Below are positions 24,329-32,682 of a stretch of DNA of 64,000 bases, in pieces; position 1 is the stretch's first letter; each line of letters opens with the position of its first letter. Under the pieces are notes generated by a model, which saw only the letters and a list, made by a program, of their open reading frames with translations, had not been told where the DNA came from and ran no database searches. A program made the position numbers and the translations under genes. Source of the stretch: Schizochytrium sp. TIO01 (lineage: Eukaryota; Protista; Bigyra: Labyrinthulomycetes); the NCBI GenBank assembly GCA_004764695.1, contig SMSO01000031.1, forward strand, positions 5,184,436 through 5,248,435. The letters run 5' to 3'.

Positions 24329-24685
24329 CTACAGGAGTTCTATACAAAGTAGCTTGCCTTCTTGACCGTGTGAACTAGGTATAGATACCAAGATTTCACA
24401 GGCACTTAAATAGTCATAAAAGCGAGGGGAAATACCTGGCTGGCTACGGTGGGTTTCATTATTTGTTATCACTTGTTGTAGCTTTGCGAAAGTTCGCTTA
24501 TAAGTTCTTTGTGACGGAAACCTTTGATGTGCATCCAAAACAGACTCACGTGCACCCGCATTGATACAAAACTGAAAGACTGCACAAGCGAAGGCTCTAT
24601 TACGCAATGCCACTATACGCGCTTTCTGCCACATCTGCATTTGTTTGACGTGTGCTTATAGCGGCCACCATCTCTGCGCCCACAT
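24329..24685 (-). pseudogene. Frameshifted final repeat and probable C-terminal cap of the ARM-repeat gene
   Basis: Restoring a 1-bp loss near 24706 gives ILGQDLNVGAEMVAAISTRQTNADV. Removing 1 bp near 24630 continues QKARIVALRNRAF...NAGARESVLDAHQRFP, which is in the same frame as the main ORF. Confidence 0.6.
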
Positions 24686-27600
24686 TCAAATCTTGTCCCA
24701 GGATCTTTTGTTGCGATTGTTGAGACCAAGATTCCGCAATACAGCACATGCTTGATTTTGCAAATCTTCATTCGTTTGATGCACGCGCATGGCGACCACA
24801 ATCTCTGCGCCAACGTTCAAATGTTGTCCCAGGATCTCTTTGTTGCGATCATTGCTGGCAGCAAGATTTGCCAATGCACCACATGACTTTTCTTGCACGT
24901 CTGCATTCGATAGATGCGCGCGCATGGCGGCCACAATCTCTACGCCCACATTCAAATCTTGCCCCAGGGTCTCTCTGTTGCGATCATTGTTGGCAGCAAG
25001 ACTCCACAATGCCCTACATGCTCTTTCTTGCACGCCTGCATTCGTTCGATGCGCGCGCATGGCGACCACAATGACTGCGCCAACGTTCAAATCTTGCCCC
25101 AGGATCTCTTTGTTGCGATTATTGCTGGCAGCAAGAATTGCCAATGCACCACATGACTTTTCTTGCACGTCTGCATTCGATAGATGCGCGCGCATGGCGG
25201 CCACAATCTCTGCGCCCACATTCAAATCTTGCCCCAGGGTCTCTCTGTTGCGATCATTGTTGGCAGCAAGACTCCACAATGCCATACATGCTCTTTCTTG
25301 CACGCCTGCATTCGTTCGATGCGCGCGCATGGCGACCACAATGTCTGCGCCAACGTTCAAATCTTGCCCCAGGATCTCTTTGTTGCGATCATTGCTGGAA
25401 ACAAGATTTGCCAATGCACCACATGACTTTTCTTGCACGTCTGCATTCGTTAGATGTGCGCGCATGGCGGCCACAATCTCTGCGCCCACATTCAAATCTC
25501 GTCCCAGGATCTCTCTGTTGCGATCGTTGAGACCAAGATTCAGCAATGTACCACATGCTTGTTCTTGCACGCCTGCATTCGTTAGATGTGCACGCATGGC
25601 GGCCACAATCTCTGCGCCCACATTCAAATCTTGCCCCAGAGTCTCTCTGTTGCGATCATTGTTGGCAGCAAGTCTCCACAATGCCCTACATGCTCTTTCT
25701 TGCACGCCTGCATTCGATAGATGCGCGCGCATGGCGGCCACAATCTCTGCGCCCACATTCAAATCTTGCCCCAGGATCTCTCTGTTGCGATCATTGTTGG
25801 CAGCAAGACTCCACAATGCCGCACATGCTGTTTTTTGCACGCCTGCATTCGTTAGATGTGCGCGCATGGCGGCCACAATCTCTGCGCCCACATTCAAATC
25901 TCGTCCCAGGATCTCTCTGTTGCGATCGTTGAGACCAAGATTCAGCAATGCACCACATGCTTGTTCTTGCACGCCTGCATTCGATAGATGTGCGCGCATG
26001 GCGGCCACAATCTCTGCGCCCACATTCAAATCTTGTCCCAGGATCTCACAGTTACGATCATTGTTGGCAGCAAGACTCCACAATGCCGCACATGCTTGAT
26101 TTTGCACGTCTGCATTCGATAGATGCGCGCGCATGGCGGCCACAATCTCTGCGCCCACATTCAAATCTTGCCCCAGGATCTCACAGTTGCGATCATTGTT
26201 GGCAGCAAGACTCCACAATGCCACACATGCTTGATTTTGCAAATCTTCATTCATGAGATGTGCGCGCATGGCGGCCACAATCTCTGCGCCCACATTCAAA
26301 TCTTGCCCCAGGATCTCTCTGTTGCGATCGTTTACAGCAAGATTCCGCAATGCACGACATGCTTGTTCTTGCACGCCTGCATTCGATAAATGCGCGCGCA
26401 TGGCGGCCACAATCTCTGCGCCCACATTCAAATCTTGCCCCAGGATCTCTTTGTTGCGATCGTTTACAGCAAGATTCAGCAATGTACCACATGCTTGATT
26501 TTGCACGTCTGCATTCGATAGATGTGCGCGCATGGCGGCCACAATCTCTGCGCCCACATTCAAATCTTGCCCCAGGATCTCTCTGTTGCGATCGTTTACA
26601 GCAAGACTGCACAATGCCCTACATGCTTGTTCTTGCACGCCTGCATTCGATAGATGTGCGCGCATGGCGGCCACAATCTCTGCGCCCACATTCAAATCTT
26701 GTCCCAGGATCTCACAGTTACGATCATTGTTGGTAGCAAGACTCCACAATGCCCTACATGCTCTTTCTTGCACGCCTGCATTCGTTAGATGCGCGCGCAT
26801 GGCGGCCACAATCTCTGCGCCAACGTTCAAATCTTGCCCCAGGATCTCTTTGTTGCGATCATTGCTGGCAGCAAGATTTCGCAATGCACCACATGCTGTT
26901 TTTTGCACGCCTGCATTCGATAGATGTGCGCGCATGGCGGCCACAATCTCTGCGCCCACATTCAAATCTTGCCCCAGGATCTCTCTGTTGCGATCATTGT
27001 TGGCAGCAAGACTCCACAATGCCCTACATGCTCTTTCTTGCACGCCTGCATTCGTTAGATGCGCGCGCATGGCGGCCACAATCTCTGCGCCAACGTTCAA
27101 ATCTTGCCCCAGGATCTCTTTGTTGCGATCATTGCTGGCAGCAAGATTTCGCAATGCACCACATGCTGTTTTTTGCACGCCTGCATTCGATAGATGTGCG
27201 CGCATGGCGGCAACAATCTCTGCGCCCACATTCAAATCTTGTCCCAGGATCTCACAGTTGCGATCATTGTTGGCAGCAAGACTCCACAATGCCACACATG
27301 CCTGATTTTGCACATCTTCATTCATTAGATGTGCGCGCATGGCGGCCACAATCTCTGCGCCCACATTCAAATCTTGCCCCAGGATCTGTCTGTTGCGATC
27401 ATTGTTGGCAGCAAGATTCCGCAATGCACCACATGCTTGTTCTTGCACGCCTGCATTCGATAGATGTGCGCGCATGGTGGCCACAATCTCTGCGCCCACA
27501 TTCAAATCTTGCCCCAGGATCTCTTTGTTGCGATCATTGCTGGCAGCAAGATTTGCCAATGCCGCACATGCTTGTTCTTGCACGTCTGCATTCGTTAGAT

Positions 27601-30600
27601 GTGCGCGCATGGCGGCCACGATCTCTGCGCCAACGTTCAAATCTTGCCCCAGGATCTCTTTGTTGCGATCATTGCTGGCAGCAAGATTTCGCAATGCACC
27701 ACATGCTGTTTTTTGCACGCCTGCATTCGATAGATGTGCGCGCATGGCGGCCACAATCTCTGCGCCCACATTCAAATCTTGCCCCAGGATCTCTCTGTTG
27801 CGATCATTGTTGGCAGCAAGATTCCGCAATACACCACATGCTTGATTTTGCACATCTTCATTCATTAGATGTGCGCGCATGGCGGCCACAATCTCTGCGC
27901 CCACATTCAAATCTTGCCCCAGAATCTCCCAGTTGCGATCGTTTACAGCAAGACTGCACAATGCCACACATGCTGTTTCTTGCACGCCTGCATTCGATAG
28001 ATGTGCGCGCATGGCGGCAAAAATCTCTGCGCCCACATTCAAATCTTGCCTCAGGATCTCTCTGTTGCGATCGTTTACAGCAAGACTGCACAATGCCACA
28101 CATGCTGATTTTTGCACGCCTGCATTCGATAGATGTGCGCGCATGGCGGCAACAATCTCTGCGCCCACATTCAAATCTTGCCCCAGGATCTCTCTGTTGC
28201 GATCGTTTACAGCAAGATTCCGCAATACACCACATGCTTGATTTTGCACGCCTGCATTCGATAGATGTGCGCGCATGGTGGCCACAATCTCTGCGCCCAC
28301 ATTCAAATCTTGCCCCAGGATCTCTTTGTTGCGATCATTGCTGGCAGCAAGATTTGCCAATGCCGCACATGCTTGTTCTTGCACGTCTGCATTCGTTAGA
28401 TGTGCGCGCATGGCGGCCACAATCTCTGCGCCCACATTCAAATCTTGTCCCAGGATCTCTTTGTTGCGATCATTGCTGGCAGCAAGATTTGCCAATGCCA
28501 CACATGCTGATTTTTGCACGCCTGCATTCGTTAGATGTGCGCGCATGGCGGCCACAATCTCTGCGCCCACATTCAAATCTTGCCCCAGGATCTCTCTGTT
28601 GCGATCGTTTACAGCAAGACTCCACAATGCCGCACATGCTTGATTTTGCACATCTTCATTCATTAGATGTGCGCGCATGGCGGCCACAATCTCTGCGCCC
28701 ACATTCAAATCTTGCCCCAGAATCTCACAGTTGCGATCGTTTACAGCAAGACTGCACAATGCCACACATGCTGATTTTTGCACGCCTGCATTCGATAGAT
28801 GTGCGCGCATGGCGGCCACAATCTCTGCGCCCACATTCAAATCTTGCCCCAGGATCTCTCTGTTGCGATCGTTTACAGCAAGATTCCCCAATGCACCACA
28901 TGCTTGTTCTTGCACGCCTGCATTCGATAGATGTGCGCGCATGGCGGCCACAATCTCTGCGCCCACATTCAAATCTTGTCCCAGGATCTCTTTGTTGCGA
29001 TCATTGCTGGCAGCAAGATTTGCCAATGCCACACATGCTGATTTTTGCACGCCTGCATTCGTTAGATGTGCGCGCATGGCGGCCACAATCTCTGCGCCCA
29101 CATTCAAATCTTGCCCCAGGATCTCTCTGTTGCGATCGTTTACAGCAAGACTCCACAATGCCGCACATGCTTGATTTTGCACATCTTCATTCATTAGATG
29201 TGCGCGCATGGCGGCCACAATCTCTGCGCCCACATTCAAATCTTGCCCCAGAATCTCACAGTTGCGATCGTTTACAGCAAGACTGCACAATGCCACACAT
29301 GCTGATTTTTGCACGCCTGCATTCGATAGATGTGCGCGCATGGCGGCCACAATCTCTGCGCCCACATTCAAATCTTGCCCCAGGATCTCTCTGTTGCGAT
29401 CGTTTACAGCAAGATTCCCCAATGCACCACATGCTTGTTCTTGCACGCCTGCATTCGATAGATGTGCGCGCATGGCGGCCACAATCTCTGCGCCCACATT
29501 CAAATCTTGCCCCAGGATCTCTCTGTTGCGATCGTTTACAGCAAGATTCCCCAATGCACCACATGCTTGTTCTTGCACGCCTGCATTCGATAGATGTGCG
29601 CGCATGGCGGCCACAATCTCTGCGCCCACATTCAAATCTTGCCCCAGGATCTCTTTGTTGCGATCGTTTACAGCAAGATTCAGCAATGTACCACATGCTT
29701 GATTTTGCACGTCTGCATTCGATAGATGTGCGCGCATGGCGGCCACAATCTCTGCGCCCACATTCAAATCTTGCCCCAGGATCTCTCTGTTGCGATCATT
29801 GTTGGCAGCAAGACTCCACAATGCCGCACATGCTGTTTTTTGCAAATCTTCATTCATGAGATGTGCGCGCATGGCGGCCACAATCTCTGCGCCCACATTC
29901 AAATCTTGTCCCAGGATCTCACAGTTGCGATCATTGTTGGCAGCAAGACTCCACAATGCCGCAAATGCTGTTTTTTGCAAATCTTCATTCATGAGATGTG
30001 CGCGCATGGCGGCCACAATCTCTGCGCCCACATTCAAATCTTGCCCCAGGATCTCTCTGTTGCGATCATTGTTGGCAGCAAGCACCCACAATGCCGCACA
30101 TGCTTGATTTTGCACATCTTCATTCATGAGATGTGCGCGCATAGCGGCAACAATCTCTGCGCCCACATTCAAATCTTGTCCCAGGATCTCTCTGTTGCGA
30201 TCATTGTTGGCAGCAAGACTGCACAATGCCCTACATGCTCTTTCTTGCACGTCTGCATTCGTTCGATGTGCGCGCATGGCGGCCACAATCTCTGCGCCCA
30301 CATTCAAACTTTGGGCCAGGATCTCTTTGTTACGATTGTTGAGAGCAAGCATCCACAATGCCCTACATGCTTGATTTTGCACGCCTGCATTCGTTCGATG
30401 TGCTTGCATGGCGGCCACAATCTCTGCGCCCACATTCAAACCTTGTCCCAGAATCTCACAGTTGCGATAATTGTTGTCAGCAAGACTCCACAACGCCCTG
30501 CATGCTTGATTTTGCACGCCTGCATTCGTTCGATGCGCGCGCATGGCGACCACAATCTCTGCGCCCACATTTAAACCTTGTCCCAGAATCTCTTTGTTGC

Positions 30601-31112
30601 GATCATTGTTGGCAAGACTCCACAATAAACCACATACTTTTTCTTGCACGCCTGCATTTGTTCGATGCGCGCGCATGGCAGCCACAATCTCTGCGCCAAC
30701 ATTTAAATCTTCTCCCAGGAGCTCTTTGTTGAGATCATTGTTGGCAGCAAGATTTCTTAATGCCCAAATTGCTTGAGTTTGCACGTCTGCATTCCTTCGA
30801 TGCGCGCGCATGGCGGCCACAATTGCTGCGCCCACATCCAAACGTTGTCCCAGGATCTCTCTGTTGCAATTGTTCTCAGCAAGCCTCCACAATGCCCTAC
30901 ATGCTCTTTCTTGCACGCCTGCATTCGTTCGATGCGCGCGCATGGCGACCACAATGTCTGCGCCAACGTTCAAATGTTGTCCCAGGATCTCTTTGTTGCG
31001 ATCATTGTTGGCAGCAAGATTTGCCAATGCACCACATGCTGATTTTTGCACATCTTCATTCGTTAGATGCGCGCGCATGGCGGCTACAATCTCTGCGCCC
31101 ACATTCAAATCT
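24640..31112. repeat. Coding tandem array of 132/135-bp units (48 + 1 degenerate) with higher-order duplications
   Basis: The anchor GGCCACAATCTCTGCGCCCACATTCAAATCTTG recurs every 132 or 135 bp. Duplicated blocks of 531 bp and 270 bp are visible. Confidence 0.97.
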
Positions 31113-31576
31113 TTTGCTAGAGTACTCGCGCATTCCGAGCTACTGTACGCGAGGGTTCCGACGCAAGCACATGCTGCAGCCTGCACTGCTGATTCGCTCG
31201 CTTGCTCTTGCAGAATACCAATCAGTACAGGGCCTAGACGATAGGTGTTTATTGCAGCCTTCGTATATTCACCGGTAGCTTCACGATGAAAGGCGAAATG
31301 AAATATCCAAAGCGCTTCAGAAATCACTTCGGCATCATCGTGTTGCTCTTCCTTTACGATTCGTTGCAAATGAACAAGAATACCCTCTTCACGAACAACT
31401 CTTCTCAGCTGATCATGACCACCTGCGGTCTCAGCAGCTTTGAATTCAGCTTCCAAAGCATTGCGCAGGATTCGTAGTGTTCGTAGCAGATCACTCCGCT
31501 CGCCTCGATCAGCCAGAACTCGAACTAGACCCCGCGCAGTTTCAACATTGACCTCTTCTCGTGGAATTGTGGCCAT
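24686..31576 (-). CDS. Giant armadillo-repeat protein (2296 aa): ~155-aa divergent helical cap followed by 48 highly conserved 44/45-aa ARM repeats
   Basis: Intronless ORF. Repeat consensus DLNVGAEIVAAMRAHLxNxxVQxxACxALxxLA(A)xNDRNxEILGQ has the ARM helix-2/helix-3 pattern. Repeats counted by hand from the translation. Confidence 0.9.
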   Translation of the reverse strand: MATIPREEVNVETARGLVRVLADRGERSDLLRTLRILRNALEAEFKAAETAGGHDQLRRVVREEGILVHLQRIVKEEQHDDAEVISEALWIFHFAFHREATGEYTKAAINTYRLGPVLIGILQEQASESAVQAAACACVGTLAYSSSECASTLAKDLNVGAEIVAAMRAHLTNEDVQKSACGALANLAANNDRNKEILGQHLNVGADIVVAMRAHRTNAGVQERACRALWRLAENNCNREILGQRLDVGAAIVAAMRAHRRNADVQTQAIWALRNLAANNDLNKELLGEDLNVGAEIVAAMRAHRTNAGVQEKVCGLLWSLANNDRNKEILGQGLNVGAEIVVAMRAHRTNAGVQNQACRALWSLADNNYRNCEILGQGLNVGAEIVAAMQAHRTNAGVQNQACRALWMLALNNRNKEILAQSLNVGAEIVAAMRAHRTNADVQERACRALCSLAANNDRNREILGQDLNVGAEIVAAMRAHLMNEDVQNQACAALWVLAANNDRNREILGQDLNVGAEIVAAMRAHLMNEDLQKTAFAALWSLAANNDRNCEILGQDLNVGAEIVAAMRAHLMNEDLQKTACAALWSLAANNDRNREILGQDLNVGAEIVAAMRAHLSNADVQNQACGTLLNLAVNDRNKEILGQDLNVGAEIVAAMRAHLSNAGVQEQACGALGNLAVNDRNREILGQDLNVGAEIVAAMRAHLSNAGVQEQACGALGNLAVNDRNREILGQDLNVGAEIVAAMRAHLSNAGVQKSACVALCSLAVNDRNCEILGQDLNVGAEIVAAMRAHLMNEDVQNQACAALWSLAVNDRNREILGQDLNVGAEIVAAMRAHLTNAGVQKSACVALANLAASNDRNKEILGQDLNVGAEIVAAMRAHLSNAGVQEQACGALGNLAVNDRNREILGQDLNVGAEIVAAMRAHLSNAGVQKSACVALCSLAVNDRNCEILGQDLNVGAEIVAAMRAHLMNEDVQNQACAALWSLAVNDRNREILGQDLNVGAEIVAAMRAHLTNAGVQKSACVALANLAASNDRNKEILGQDLNVGAEIVAAMRAHLTNADVQEQACAALANLAASNDRNKEILGQDLNVGAEIVATMRAHLSNAGVQNQACGVLRNLAVNDRNREILGQDLNVGAEIVAAMRAHLSNAGVQKSACVALCSLAVNDRNREILRQDLNVGAEIFAAMRAHLSNAGVQETACVALCSLAVNDRNWEILGQDLNVGAEIVAAMRAHLMNEDVQNQACGVLRNLAANNDRNREILGQDLNVGAEIVAAMRAHLSNAGVQKTACGALRNLAASNDRNKEILGQDLNVGAEIVAAMRAHLTNADVQEQACAALANLAASNDRNKEILGQDLNVGAEIVATMRAHLSNAGVQEQACGALRNLAANNDRNRQILGQDLNVGAEIVAAMRAHLMNEDVQNQACVALWSLAANNDRNCEILGQDLNVGAEIVAAMRAHLSNAGVQKTACGALRNLAASNDRNKEILGQDLNVGAEIVAAMRAHLTNAGVQERACRALWSLAANNDRNREILGQDLNVGAEIVAAMRAHLSNAGVQKTACGALRNLAASNDRNKEILGQDLNVGAEIVAAMRAHLTNAGVQERACRALWSLATNNDRNCEILGQDLNVGAEIVAAMRAHLSNAGVQEQACRALCSLAVNDRNREILGQDLNVGAEIVAAMRAHLSNADVQNQACGTLLNLAVNDRNKEILGQDLNVGAEIVAAMRAHLSNAGVQEQACRALRNLAVNDRNREILGQDLNVGAEIVAAMRAHLMNEDLQNQACVALWSLAANNDRNCEILGQDLNVGAEIVAAMRAHLSNADVQNQACAALWSLAANNDRNCEILGQDLNVGAEIVAAMRAHLSNAGVQEQACGALLNLGLNDRNREILGRDLNVGAEIVAAMRAHLTNAGVQKTACAALWSLAANNDRNREILGQDLNVGAEIVAAMRAHLSNAGVQERACRALWRLAANNDRNRETLGQDLNVGAEIVAAMRAHLTNAGVQEQACGTLLNLGLNDRNREILGRDLNVGAEIVAAMRAHLTNADVQEKSCGALANLVSSNDRNKEILGQDLNVGADIVVAMRAHRTNAGVQERACMALWSLAANNDRNRETLGQDLNVGAEIVAAMRAHLSNADVQEKSCGALAILAASNNRNKEILGQDLNVGAVIVVAMRAHRTNAGVQERACRALWSLAANNDRNRETLGQDLNVGVEIVAAMRAHLSNADVQEKSCGALANLAASNDRNKEILGQHLNVGAEIVVAMRVHQTNEDLQNQACAVLRNLGLNNRNKRSWDKI

Positions 31577-32682
31577 CTCAGGCTCTTGGGTTTCTCGCAG
31601 TGCACTAATAAACTCTTGTCGCGCTCGTCGCTGGCTGCGCGTCCCAGCACGACCCTATATCTGTGAGGCTGATGTCAGGATGGTCTTTGAGCAATACAAG
31701 TATGGTTTCACGACCTTGGTCAGTCTGAACATCCTGTGCAACAGGATGTACCTGCTAACTACTGACTGCCTAAGCAGAAAGGGAAATGAATCAACACAAC
31801 GCATTGCCTTTGAGAGCCTTAGAGGGATGCCCTGTTGACTTGCACATGACAATCCATTGGCCAATCCATTTACATGGTACTCCACCTGCACAGTAGTTCG
31901 TTTGGAAGTGAGTGACCCTTTAGGGAATAATGGCAACGAGGCAAGTCACAAGATGAGTTTGCAAGGCTATCAGACAGCAGATCCAAATCAACCCGAATCG
32001 ATCCAGGTCGATTCAACTAGCTACCCAAGCCAAGCACCAGCACGAGCTTTAACAACAACCAAACACAACAGTCTCCGACAATCTTCAACCATCTCTAAGC
32101 AATCATAAACGTGTCATTCAGTTTGTCAGCCATGACTGATTGTCATGACTAAGTGGACTGCCTAATGATGGGATGGACTACTATGGTTACTCATAATTGC
32201 CACTTATGGCGTTTGTTTTTTTTCAAATAAAGAAAATATTCAAATTAGTCCACTCTCAATATGGTTTCTCACTGATAGGAGTAGAGACTGCTAGAAGTAA
32301 TGCATGCAAGATTTTATGTTTCAGAGTAATCTATGGTAACGCTATTTAGTACGTTATAATTTAGGATGTTTCACAATATTTAAATTTGCGTTCCGCAGGT
32401 CTAACCGCGGGTCTCTCTAACTTCGCAAACTTTGTTGTTAAACAGGAAAACTCGCGCTCGCGCTGTCCGGAAGGCCCCTCTCGGCCTCTGTGCGCAGGTT
32501 TCGTGGAGCTAACTCCGCCAAAACTGCGTCGCAAGTTTTGCTTGAGCGGAAAAGTGCTAGGTTTTCAACGAACCTGACGCGGTTTGAGGGTTTCTGGCGC
32601 ATTGCGATCGAAAGCGAGACTATACAGTTGTGGACTTTCCGAAGCTTGAGCTGTACCAAGGACCAGCCCCAAAACTCTCAAG

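What the first reader, a model, noticed from the sequence alone, without database searches (positions are those of the whole stretch)
24686..31576. Hypervariable armadillo array: candidate natural diversifying receptor
Seen: 48 repeats whose framework (DLNVGAEIVAAMRAH...NDRN.EILGQ) is nearly invariant, often even at synonymous sites. A fixed set of positions varies heavily: the dipeptide after VQ (EQ, NQ, KS, KT, ER, EK, ET, TQ), the residue after AC (G, R, V, A, M), the dipeptide after AL (WS, AN, RN, CS, GN, LN, WR, WM, WV, AI), A/E-G/D before VQ, and the loop after LA. Established: aligned by eye to the 42-aa ARM consensus (N24...Q29 E30 A L W33 A L S36 N37 I A S40 G41), these are positions 26, 29, 30, 33, 36, 37, 40 and 41. 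That is the helix-3 face forming the peptide-binding groove in importin-alpha and beta-catenin, and largely the set randomised in designed ARM libraries. Inference: a conserved scaffold with variable binding face resembles fungal HET-E/NLR high-identity WD40/TPR/ANK arrays and TALE repeat codes. This could be an ARM-based non-self sensor or modular binder in a protist. No enzymatic or NLR effector domain is visible, so function is unproven.
Basis: partly seen in the sequence, partly recalled or inferred. Interest (0 to 1): 0.88.

Follow-up and report, generated by a model that had tools for sequence, protein, structure and literature searches.

The report
Truncated gene with hypervariable armadillo array
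A protist gene encodes 48 near-identical armadillo repeats that differ almost only on their ligand-binding face; it is a cut-down copy of a receptor-like kinase family that has lost its kinase and both end caps, so it shows how such arrays diversify but may itself no longer signal.

Summary
One 2296-aa ORF (24686-31576, minus strand) holds a 155-aa N-cap and 48 tandem ARM units of 44/45 aa. Ten of 45 codons carry most of the variation. They lie on one face of helix 3, the flanking loops and one helix-1 site. Their non-synonymous divergence (0.36) is about three times the framework's synonymous divergence (0.12).

The same columns vary fastest in about 20 paralogous arrays in this genome. This scan had already noted that family on other DNA of the genome.

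New here: this locus is a truncated family member. Close paralogues carry a helical, weakly MLKL-like N-domain, a protein kinase, the same N-cap, an ARM array and a conserved C-cap. In this copy:
- the N-domain is absent;
- the kinase is cleanly deleted, and a second, frameshifted locus shares the junction;
- a frameshift in unit 48 cuts off the last unit and the C-cap.

The 6.9-kb array ORF is nevertheless intact, its framework is under constraint, and most amplification post-dates the kinase loss.

My reading is a sensor-only derivative (binder, decoy or regulator), possibly starting to decay. Transcription, repeat number in long reads and strain variation could not be tested.

The parts
24686..31576 (-). 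Intact ORF of 2296 codons plus stop: N-cap followed by 48 ARM units
31112..31576 (-). N-cap (aa 1-155): about three degenerate ARM-like units. It is shared at 54-85% identity with the post-kinase region of the paralogues. Residues 1-9 (MATIPREEV) derive from the pre-kinase linker.
24689..31111 (-). Array of 48 ARM units (44/45 aa; 135/132 nt). Units 8-42 are a young core (framework nt divergence 3.6%). Units 1-7 and 43-48 are more divergent.
28397..29509 (-). Exact tandem duplication of a 531-nt four-unit block (units 13-16 = 17-20). It is a 582-nt exact repeat and the longest in the array.
31541..31709 (-). Remnant of the pre-kinase linker of the parental gene type. The kinase-deletion junction lies at about 31549/31550. 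A 5-bp deletion that creates a stop lies at about 31655-31660, so the ORF can only start at M1.
24476..24715 (-). Decayed 3' end. A frameshift at about 24706-24709 in helix 1 of unit 48 gives RSWDKI-stop. Behind it lie a 49th unit out of frame with stops and the family's conserved C-cap remnant at 24476-24565.

Best explanation
The locus is a truncated, sensor-only member of a multigene family in a thraustochytrid-like protist.

Full-length family members have this order: a helical, weakly MLKL-like N-domain, a protein kinase, an N-cap, an ARM array and a conserved C-cap. In this copy the N-domain is gone and the kinase was removed by a clean in-frame deletion. A frameshift in unit 48 has cut off the last unit and the C-cap.

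What remains is an N-cap plus 48 LRRK2-type ARM units. The array grew in place by unequal crossing-over. It contains an exact four-unit block duplication and several identical units that are far apart. Short-tract exchange or recurrent mutation then reassorted the variable codons.

Variation is concentrated on the solvent-exposed face of helix 3, the adjoining loops and one helix-1 site. In ARM solenoids these positions line the concave ligand groove. These codons change faster than synonymous sites, whereas the framework is under purifying selection.

Inferred, not shown: if translated, the product is a very long cytosolic ARM superhelix. It would bind extended peptide or protein ligands as its paralogues' sensor domains do, but it could not signal by itself. 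It would therefore act as a free binder, decoy or regulator, or it is in the first stage of decay.
For: Array and fold. The AF2 model of aa 1-378 has pLDDT 91.7 with helices at unit columns 4-14, 19-33 and 37-46. The best structural matches are designed ARM proteins (TM 0.68-0.78), beta-catenin, importin-alpha and LRRK2. By sequence, the LRRK2 ARM domain is the best solved relative (E 2.6e-11).

Selection pattern:
- Variable columns have pN 0.36, against framework pS 0.12 and pN 0.038.
- Counting events on a minimum spanning tree (MST) of the units gives N per site at variable codons about 2.0 times S per site overall.
- With the columns fixed from this array, pN(var)/pS(all) is 1.2-2.3 in every other array with pS below 0.37.
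- Across 487 units of the family, these columns hold 17-19 different amino acids.

Family context:
- At least 25 paralogous loci exist.
- Pkinase lies upstream of the homologous N-cap in L014, L016, L017, L019, L021 and L024.
- The paralogue N-domain gives MLKL executioner domain as top Foldseek and VIA hits, with Z 10.1-8.7, and Pfam MLKL_N at E 0.076.

Truncation:
- The pre-kinase linker is joined directly to the post-kinase N-cap, with a 5-bp deletion and a stop upstream of M1.
- The same junction occurs at C31 at about 4.1965 Mb (locus L020).
- An independent public run has a 610-nt contig across the junction with 9 differences (record 15).
- The 3' frameshift and C-cap remnant are shown.

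Maintenance of the array:
- Interior units have framework pS 0.095 and pN 0.018, while dS between the two kinase-less N-caps is 0.16. Most amplification therefore post-dates the kinase loss.
- There is no stop or frameshift in 6.9 kb. P is 1.8e-4 for 278 MST substitutions under neutrality.
- 28 distinct H3 words occur among the 48 units, and almost none is shared with paralogues.
Against: - Both gene ends are decayed, and the sister kinase-less locus is frameshifted. This fits a pseudogene on its way out.
- The most recent (singleton) framework changes give omega of about 0.6, which cannot be told apart from 1 (8 N: 4 S). They include core replacements V9F, C26F and G44R.
- The variable columns were chosen after the fact for this array. 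MST counts are inflated by recombination.
- Variable codons also show raised synonymous-type differences (pS 0.32). Part of the diversity may therefore be old variants that have been reshuffled rather than new mutations.
- Some unit frameworks are identical to units in distant paralogues. Ectopic gene conversion could therefore mimic purifying selection.
- There is no evidence of transcription. All public runs available were short assembled contigs, and the 'RNA?' labels were guesses.
- The repeat number was not checked with long reads.
Confidence: 0.6

Rival explanations
1. It is a young pseudogene: a dead relic of a kinase-ARM receptor gene. The array ORF survives only because it was amplified recently from stop-free units, and because units are still exchanged with intact paralogues.
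For: - The N-domain, the kinase and the C-cap are all lost, and there is a 5-bp deletion upstream of M1.
- The sister locus L020 is split over three reading frames.
- Singleton framework changes have omega of about 0.6, not significantly below 1.
- Other family members are also broken (stops inside matches; split ORFs). This suggests birth-and-death turnover in the family.
- Some frameworks are identical to units in L014 and L016.
Against: - The array has no stop or frameshift in 6888 nt, whereas the roughly 430 nt of flanking remnants carry at least 4-5 disabling lesions.
- Framework omega in the interior units is 0.19.
- Amplification appears younger than the kinase loss, so a kinase-less array was under constraint for some time.
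- The interior units carry their own signature (Leu at column 16), which L014 and L016 lack. They are therefore not simple converted copies.
Confidence: 0.33
2. It is a silent or weakly expressed reservoir of ARM units. It would donate segments by gene conversion to the kinase-linked receptor paralogues, in the way that cassette archives feed expressed loci in other variable gene systems.
For: - It is ARM-only, it has the largest array among the close paralogues, and family members lie on the same contig.
- Paralogues show mosaic relationships: the L020 N-cap resembles this locus at its 5' end and L019 at its 3' end.
- Unit frameworks are identical or within 1% across loci.
Against: - Of the 28 helix-3 words in this array, essentially only the consensus-like EQGRN recurs in paralogues. 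No recent transfer of the variable parts is visible.
- No mechanism or directionality is shown.
Confidence: 0.07
3. The array is an ordinary structural or scaffolding ARM protein. Its variable positions are simply unconstrained surface, with no recognition role.
For: - Long ARM-only arrays of 47-49 older, diverged units exist elsewhere in the genome (L025, L026).
- The closest named homologue outside the genome is annotated 'Protein aardvark', a beta-catenin-like name, in Hondaea fermentalgiana.
Against: - Exposed residues of helix 2 on the convex side (for example E7, R13, H15) are almost invariant, while the helix-3 face varies.
- pN at the variable codons exceeds pS here and in 13 other arrays.
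- The same columns sample 17-19 amino acids across the family.
Confidence: 0.08
4. The array length or order is an assembly artefact, that is, an expansion or stutter of a shorter repeat.
For: - There is an exact 582-nt repeat at offset 531.
- Short-read contigs from four public runs cannot span the array and show many conflicting joints.
Against: - 40 of the 47 full units are distinct at nucleotide level, and all other exact repeats are 214 nt or shorter.
- The frame is kept over 6.9 kb.
- The genome is in 37 contigs of up to 9.8 Mb, which implies long-read assembly.
- At most the one four-unit block is in doubt.
Confidence: 0.03

Closest known systems
Fungal NLR repeat domains with high internal conservation (HET-E/HET-D WD40, ANK and TPR arrays; PMC4986451)
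   Same: - Tandem solenoid repeats that are nearly identical even at DNA level.
- A few hypervariable positions under diversity-enhancing evolution, mapping to the concave binding face.
- Evidence of unequal crossing-over and unit shuffling.
- Membership of a large birth-and-death gene family linked to cell-death-type domains.
   Different: - The repeat type is armadillo, which that survey does not report.
- The host is a stramenopile protist rather than a fungus.
- The family uses a kinase and a helical N-domain in place of a NACHT/NB-ARC NTPase.
- This copy carries no signalling domain at all.
Designed armadillo repeat proteins (dArmRP) and importin-alpha peptide binders (PMC4756613, PMC11228518; PDB 5MFD, 5AEI)
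   Same: - Same fold (Foldseek TM 0.68-0.78).
- The naturally variable columns coincide with the exposed helix-3 positions 29, 30 and 33 and their neighbours, which form the peptide pockets and are randomised in libraries.
- The conserved columns match the buried positions 27, 32, 34 and 38.
   Different: - The Trp33 ladder is absent, and Asn37 is kept in only about half of the units. The importin-type mode of gripping the peptide backbone is therefore not conserved.
- No ligand is known.
LRRK2 N-terminal ARM domain (Pfam PF23744; PDB 7LHT, 8TZB)
   Same: It is the best sequence relative among solved structures (E 2.6e-11). The two share the motif AM..H..N..VQ..AC.AL..L. Like the paralogues here, LRRK2 combines this ARM type with a protein kinase in one chain.
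   Different: - There are no ANK, LRR, Roc-COR or WD40 domains here.
- In the paralogues the ARM array lies C-terminal to the kinase.
- LRRK2 repeats are diverged and not hypervariable.
MLKL (four-helix-bundle executioner domain plus pseudokinase)
   Same: Close paralogues have an N-terminal helical domain followed by a kinase domain. The top structural matches of that N-domain are all MLKL executioner domains (Z 10.1-8.7).
   Different: The match is weak for a helical bundle, with the next unrelated hit at Z 8.3. The locus under study has neither domain.

Membership tests
Armadillo repeat fold (Pfam Arm PF00514 / ARM_LRRK2 PF23744) | Pfam models matched above their curated cut-offs | tested here: met
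   ARM_LRRK2 scores 438 bits against a cut-off of 26.2, and Arm scores 154 bits against a cut-off of 20.6.
Armadillo repeat fold (Pfam Arm PF00514 / ARM_LRRK2 PF23744) | A three-helix unit of about 42 aa (H1-H2-H3) stacked into a superhelix | tested here: met
   The AF2 model has pLDDT 91.7 and pTM 0.90. Each 44/45-aa unit has three helices. Foldseek top hits are designed ARM proteins, beta-catenin and importin-alpha.
Importin-alpha / dArmRP-type peptide binder | A conserved Trp33 and Asn37 ladder on helix 3 | tested here: not met
   Column 27 (equivalent to Trp33) is G18/R10/A9/V8/W1/M1. Column 31 (equivalent to Asn37) is N22/S20 plus others.
Repeats with high internal conservation and hypervariable sites (fungal NLR type, PMC4986451) | Units about 85% identical or more over at least 100 aa | tested here: met
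   Interior units have mean aa identity 83.5%. Many pairs reach 90-100%, including an identical block of 177 aa. Nucleotide identity is 87%.
Repeats with high internal conservation and hypervariable sites (fungal NLR type, PMC4986451) | Variable sites on the binding face evolving faster than neutral | tested here: inconclusive
   pN(var)/pS is 1.1-2.9 depending on the yardstick, and the excess is replicated in 13 other arrays. No recombination-aware likelihood test could be run.
Repeats with high internal conservation and hypervariable sites (fungal NLR type, PMC4986451) | A NACHT or NB-ARC NTPase domain in the same protein | tested here: not met
   Neither this ORF nor the paralogues has an NTPase domain. 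The paralogues have Pkinase instead.
Repeats with high internal conservation and hypervariable sites (fungal NLR type, PMC4986451) | Repeat-number polymorphism between strains | not testable with these tools
   Only short assembled contigs were available, and none spans the array.
N-domain / kinase / ARM family of this genome | Homologous N-cap and the same ARM unit consensus | tested here: met
   The N-cap is 54-85% identical to at least 12 loci, and the unit HMM matches 24 paralogous ORFs.
N-domain / kinase / ARM family of this genome | A protein kinase domain upstream of the N-cap | tested here: not met
   The kinase is deleted. The pre-kinase linker is fused to the post-kinase N-cap at about 31549/31550.
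N-domain / kinase / ARM family of this genome | A conserved C-terminal cap (LGARExV..A..RFPS) | tested here: not met
   The cap is present only behind a frameshift and stops, at 24476-24565.
Diversity-generating (adenine-directed) mutagenesis | Variation restricted to adenine positions of a template | tested here: not met
   All substitution classes occur at the variable codons, with no bias towards A.

The most novel reading that the evidence does not exclude
The kinase-less 48-unit array is an expressed free sensor or decoy. It would work together with the N-domain/kinase/ARM receptors of the same family in an immune or allorecognition system that does not use NLRs. Each ARM unit would read a short stretch of an extended ligand through its variable helix-3 pocket. 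That would make it a natural counterpart of designed modular armadillo binders.
Probability: 0.15. Interest if true: 0.9.

Novelty: new variant of a known kind. Interest (0 to 1): 0.62.

Why it matters
Hypervariable, internally conserved solenoid repeats are known as the sensor parts of fungal NLRs (WD40, ANK, TPR) and of LRR receptors. Three full-text searches found no description of an armadillo version, or of the thraustochytrid family it belongs to.

This array is the largest and youngest among the close paralogues. It therefore gives the clearest view of which ARM positions nature diversifies. Those positions coincide with the ones protein engineers randomise.

The kinase-deletion junction and the decayed caps add a concrete example of birth-and-death turnover in such a family. 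They also raise a testable question: are sensor-only derivatives used as decoys or regulators, or are they simply dying copies?

Tried and rejected
The organism could therefore not be identified by that route. Affiliation rests on the best named homologues being from Hondaea fermentalgiana at 45-47% identity and on earlier scan notes.
There was no proven RNA run and no piece spanning the array. The joints could not be interpreted because of the repeats. Transcription, repeat number and strain polymorphism therefore stayed untested.
- The loose end seen at 31710 in all four runs is explained by contigs from kinase-bearing paralogues that share the linker sequence.
- DGR-like adenine mutagenesis was rejected.
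- A Tajima relative-rate test on the N-cap showed no acceleration in this lineage and does not discriminate between readings.
- N-cap omega is 0.4-0.66 in all comparisons, intact or broken, so it does not discriminate either.
- Pfam on the N-cap alone gave only a sub-threshold Arm hit.
- The repeat finder output added nothing beyond TRF. Exact repeats were computed separately.
- Three literature searches found no prior description.
- No likelihood site-model test was run, because PAML and HyPhy are not available.
- Complex prediction, the protein atlas and the representative-protein search were not used, because no binding claim or wider-distribution claim depended on them.


Full report
**What is there.** The minus strand of the window carries one uninterrupted ORF, 24686-31576, of 2296 codons. 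Tandem Repeats Finder reports a single array at 24661-31113 with period 135, 48.3 copies and 87% matches. Splitting on the L[ND]VG motif gives a 155-aa N-terminal region followed by exactly 48 units of 44 or 45 aa. Pfam scores the protein as ARM_LRRK2 (6e-131) and Arm (4e-46).

The window is eukaryotic and intron-poor. Its neighbours are single-ORF genes for MCM5, an EF3-like ABC protein, Rrp6 and FAP206. It lies on a 9.8-Mb contig of a 64-Mb, 37-contig assembly. The best named homologues are from the thraustochytrid Hondaea fermentalgiana at 45-47% identity. That agrees with earlier scan notes on the organism.

**The variation pattern.** I built a codon alignment of the units, counting columns from the D of DLNVG.

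- Ten columns (17, 20, 23, 24, 27, 30, 31, 34, 35, 40) have amino-acid entropy of 0.94-2.3 bits. Columns 16 and 19 are weaker.
- Eight columns use one codon in all 47 full units.
- Framework pS is 0.12 and pN 0.038. At the variable columns pN is 0.36 and pS 0.32.
- Counting changes on a minimum spanning tree (MST) of the 40 distinct units gives 5.4 non-synonymous events per site at variable codons, against 2.7 synonymous events per site overall. Framework omega is 0.34.

Because the columns were chosen after the fact, I fixed them and tested the other arrays of the family. In every array with pS below 0.37, pN at these columns exceeds pS by 1.2-2.3-fold. Older arrays are saturated. Across 487 units from 24 ORFs, these columns hold 17-19 different amino acids, while core columns hold 4-7.

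Three caveats apply:
- Recombination inflates the MST counts.
- The variable codons also differ at third positions, for example GGT/GCG/GTG/AGG at column 27. Part of the diversity is therefore probably old variants reshuffled rather than new point mutations.
- No likelihood test that allows for recombination could be run.

**Where the variable sites sit.** An AlphaFold2 model of residues 1-378, built with 14 paralogue sequences, has pLDDT 91.7 and pTM 0.90. Each unit has helices at columns 4-14 (H2), 19-33 (H3) and 37-46 (H1 of the next repeat). Columns 20, 23, 24, 27, 30 and 31 form an i, i+3, i+4, i+7, i+10, i+11 stripe on H3. Columns 17, 34 and 35 lie in the flanking loops, and column 40 is the fourth residue of H1.

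The Pfam Arm match places HMM positions 25-41 on columns 18-34. In designed-ARM numbering, columns 23, 24, 27, 30 and 31 are therefore positions 29, 30, 33, 36 and 37. Published structures describe Glu30 and Trp33 as exposed peptide-binding residues, and Ile27, Leu32, Thr34 and Ile38 as buried (PMC4756613). Selected pockets use residues 29, 30 and 33 (PMC11228518). The buried positions correspond to the conserved V21, C26, A28 and L32 here.

Foldseek's best matches are designed ARM proteins (TM 0.68-0.78), beta-catenin, importin-alpha and LRRK2. By sequence, the LRRK2 ARM domain is the closest solved relative. The importin-type Trp/Asn ladder is not conserved, so the binding mode need not be the same. 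I had no access to model coordinates, so the assignment to the groove rests on helix periodicity and on established ARM architecture.

**How the array was built.**
- Units 13-16 and 17-20 are identical. This is a 582-nt exact repeat at offset 531.
- Units 11 and 35 are identical, as are 26 and 32, and also 12, 13 and 17.
- Interior units 8-42 differ by 3.6% at framework nucleotides, against 9-10% to units of other arrays. The core was therefore amplified in place.
- The three H3 blocks occur in 27 combinations of 8 x 6 x 10 states, with all four-gamete classes present over distances of a few codons. This requires short-tract exchange or recurrent mutation.
- Of the 28 H3 words, only the consensus-like one recurs in paralogues.
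- There is no adenine-directed mutation bias.

**The family, and what this copy has lost.** A six-frame search of the genome finds at least 25 paralogous loci. In close paralogues the region homologous to this N-cap follows a protein kinase domain. In L014, L016, L021 and L024 the kinase is preceded by a helical domain of about 215 aa. I modelled that domain (pLDDT 81.8). Its best Foldseek hits (E 0.04) and its best six VIA hits (Z 10.1-8.7, against 8.3 for the next unrelated fold) are all MLKL executioner domains, and Pfam MLKL_N scores E 0.076. This is suggestive but weak for a helical bundle.

The upstream and downstream remnants at this locus show what was lost.

- *Kinase deletion.* Upstream of the ATG, the sequence still encodes the pre-kinase linker (ETILVLLKDHPDISLTDI ... 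GRAGTRSQRRARQEFISALRETQEPE-MATIPREEV). It runs directly into the post-kinase N-cap (NVETARGLV...). About 295 codons of kinase are therefore cleanly deleted.
- *Start codon.* A 5-bp deletion creates a stop just upstream, so translation can only begin at the Met of 'EMATIP'.
- *A second copy with the same junction.* The same junction occurs at C31 at about 4.1965 Mb (L020, 88% nucleotide identity). That array is split over three reading frames.
- *Independent support.* A 610-nt contig from an independent public run crosses the junction with nine differences, so the structure is not an assembly artefact.
- *3' end.* A frameshift in helix 1 of unit 48 yields RSWDKI-stop. Behind it lie a 49th unit, out of frame and with stops, and the C-cap conserved across the family (LGARExV..A..RFPS) at 24476-24565.

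**Gene or relic?**

For a functioning ARM-only gene:
- There is no stop or frameshift in 6888 nt, while the roughly 430 nt of flanking remnants carry at least four or five lesions.
- 3.05% of possible substitutions in the array would create a stop, giving P = 1.8e-4 for none in 278 MST events.
- Interior framework omega is 0.19. Interior pS (0.095) is lower than dS between the two kinase-less N-caps (0.16). Most amplification therefore happened after the kinase was lost.

For a relic:
- Both ends are decayed, and the sister copy is broken.
- Singleton framework changes give omega of about 0.6 (8 N: 4 S, not significantly below 1) and include core replacements.
- Some unit frameworks are identical to units of intact paralogues. 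Gene conversion could therefore mimic constraint.

The relative-rate and omega tests on the N-cap do not discriminate. I put roughly 0.6 on a sensor-only protein that is, or very recently was, functional, and roughly a third on a young pseudogene.

**What could not be tested.** The public runs that hold the stretch are short assembled contigs. The 'RNA?' labels are guesses, and coverage looks DNA-like. No piece spans the array, and the joints cannot be interpreted. Transcription, true unit number and strain polymorphism therefore remain open.

**Comparison and novelty.** The closest known principle is the highly internally conserved WD40, ANK and TPR arrays of fungal NLRs, which have hypervariable concave-face positions and undergo concerted evolution (PMC4986451). 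This array differs in three ways: the repeat type is armadillo, the associated domains in the family are a kinase and a helical N-domain rather than a NOD, and the host lineage is different. Three full-text searches found no description of it.

This scan had already noted the family at other loci of this genome. New here are the truncated nature of this locus and the replicated test with columns fixed in advance. I class it as a new variant of a known kind.

Noticed in passing
L020:2139-5085 (G000:C31, about 4,196,100-4,199,100): A sister kinase-less copy with the same deletion junction and about 13-16 ARM units. It is split over three reading frames. Its N-cap is a mosaic: the 5' part resembles this locus and the 3' part resembles the kinase-bearing L019.
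   Followed up: partly
L013:6360-9998 and L014:1658-5707 (G000:C30, about 181-191 kb): Two tandem N-domain/kinase/ARM genes whose 15-unit arrays give identical per-column statistics. This looks like a very recent whole-gene duplication.
   Followed up: no
window:31710 (all four runs): Contigs of every run leave the window sequence at the same base. The loose sequence matches the linker of kinase-bearing paralogues (…GHDQVE…). These contigs therefore come from paralogues, not from a structural variant of this locus.
   Followed up: partly
window:8614-12603 (-): An EF3-like protein (HEAT_EF3 plus two ABC domains) carries an N-terminal AN1-type zinc finger. This is an unusual fusion.
   Followed up: no
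L021:2703-8974 (G000:C34, about 4.355-4.361 Mb); L019 3' end (G000:C31, about 3.718 Mb): Other family members are interrupted by single stops or frameshifts inside their arrays. This suggests frequent pseudogenisation (birth-and-death) in the family.
   Followed up: no
window:21721-23104: Long ORFs of 316-361 aa overlap on both strands in the same 1.4 kb. This may be a compositionally biased or repetitive stretch.
   Followed up: no
window:2653-4635 (+) and window:39676-40743 (+): ORFs of 660 and 355 aa with no Pfam match at E <= 0.001.
   Followed up: no
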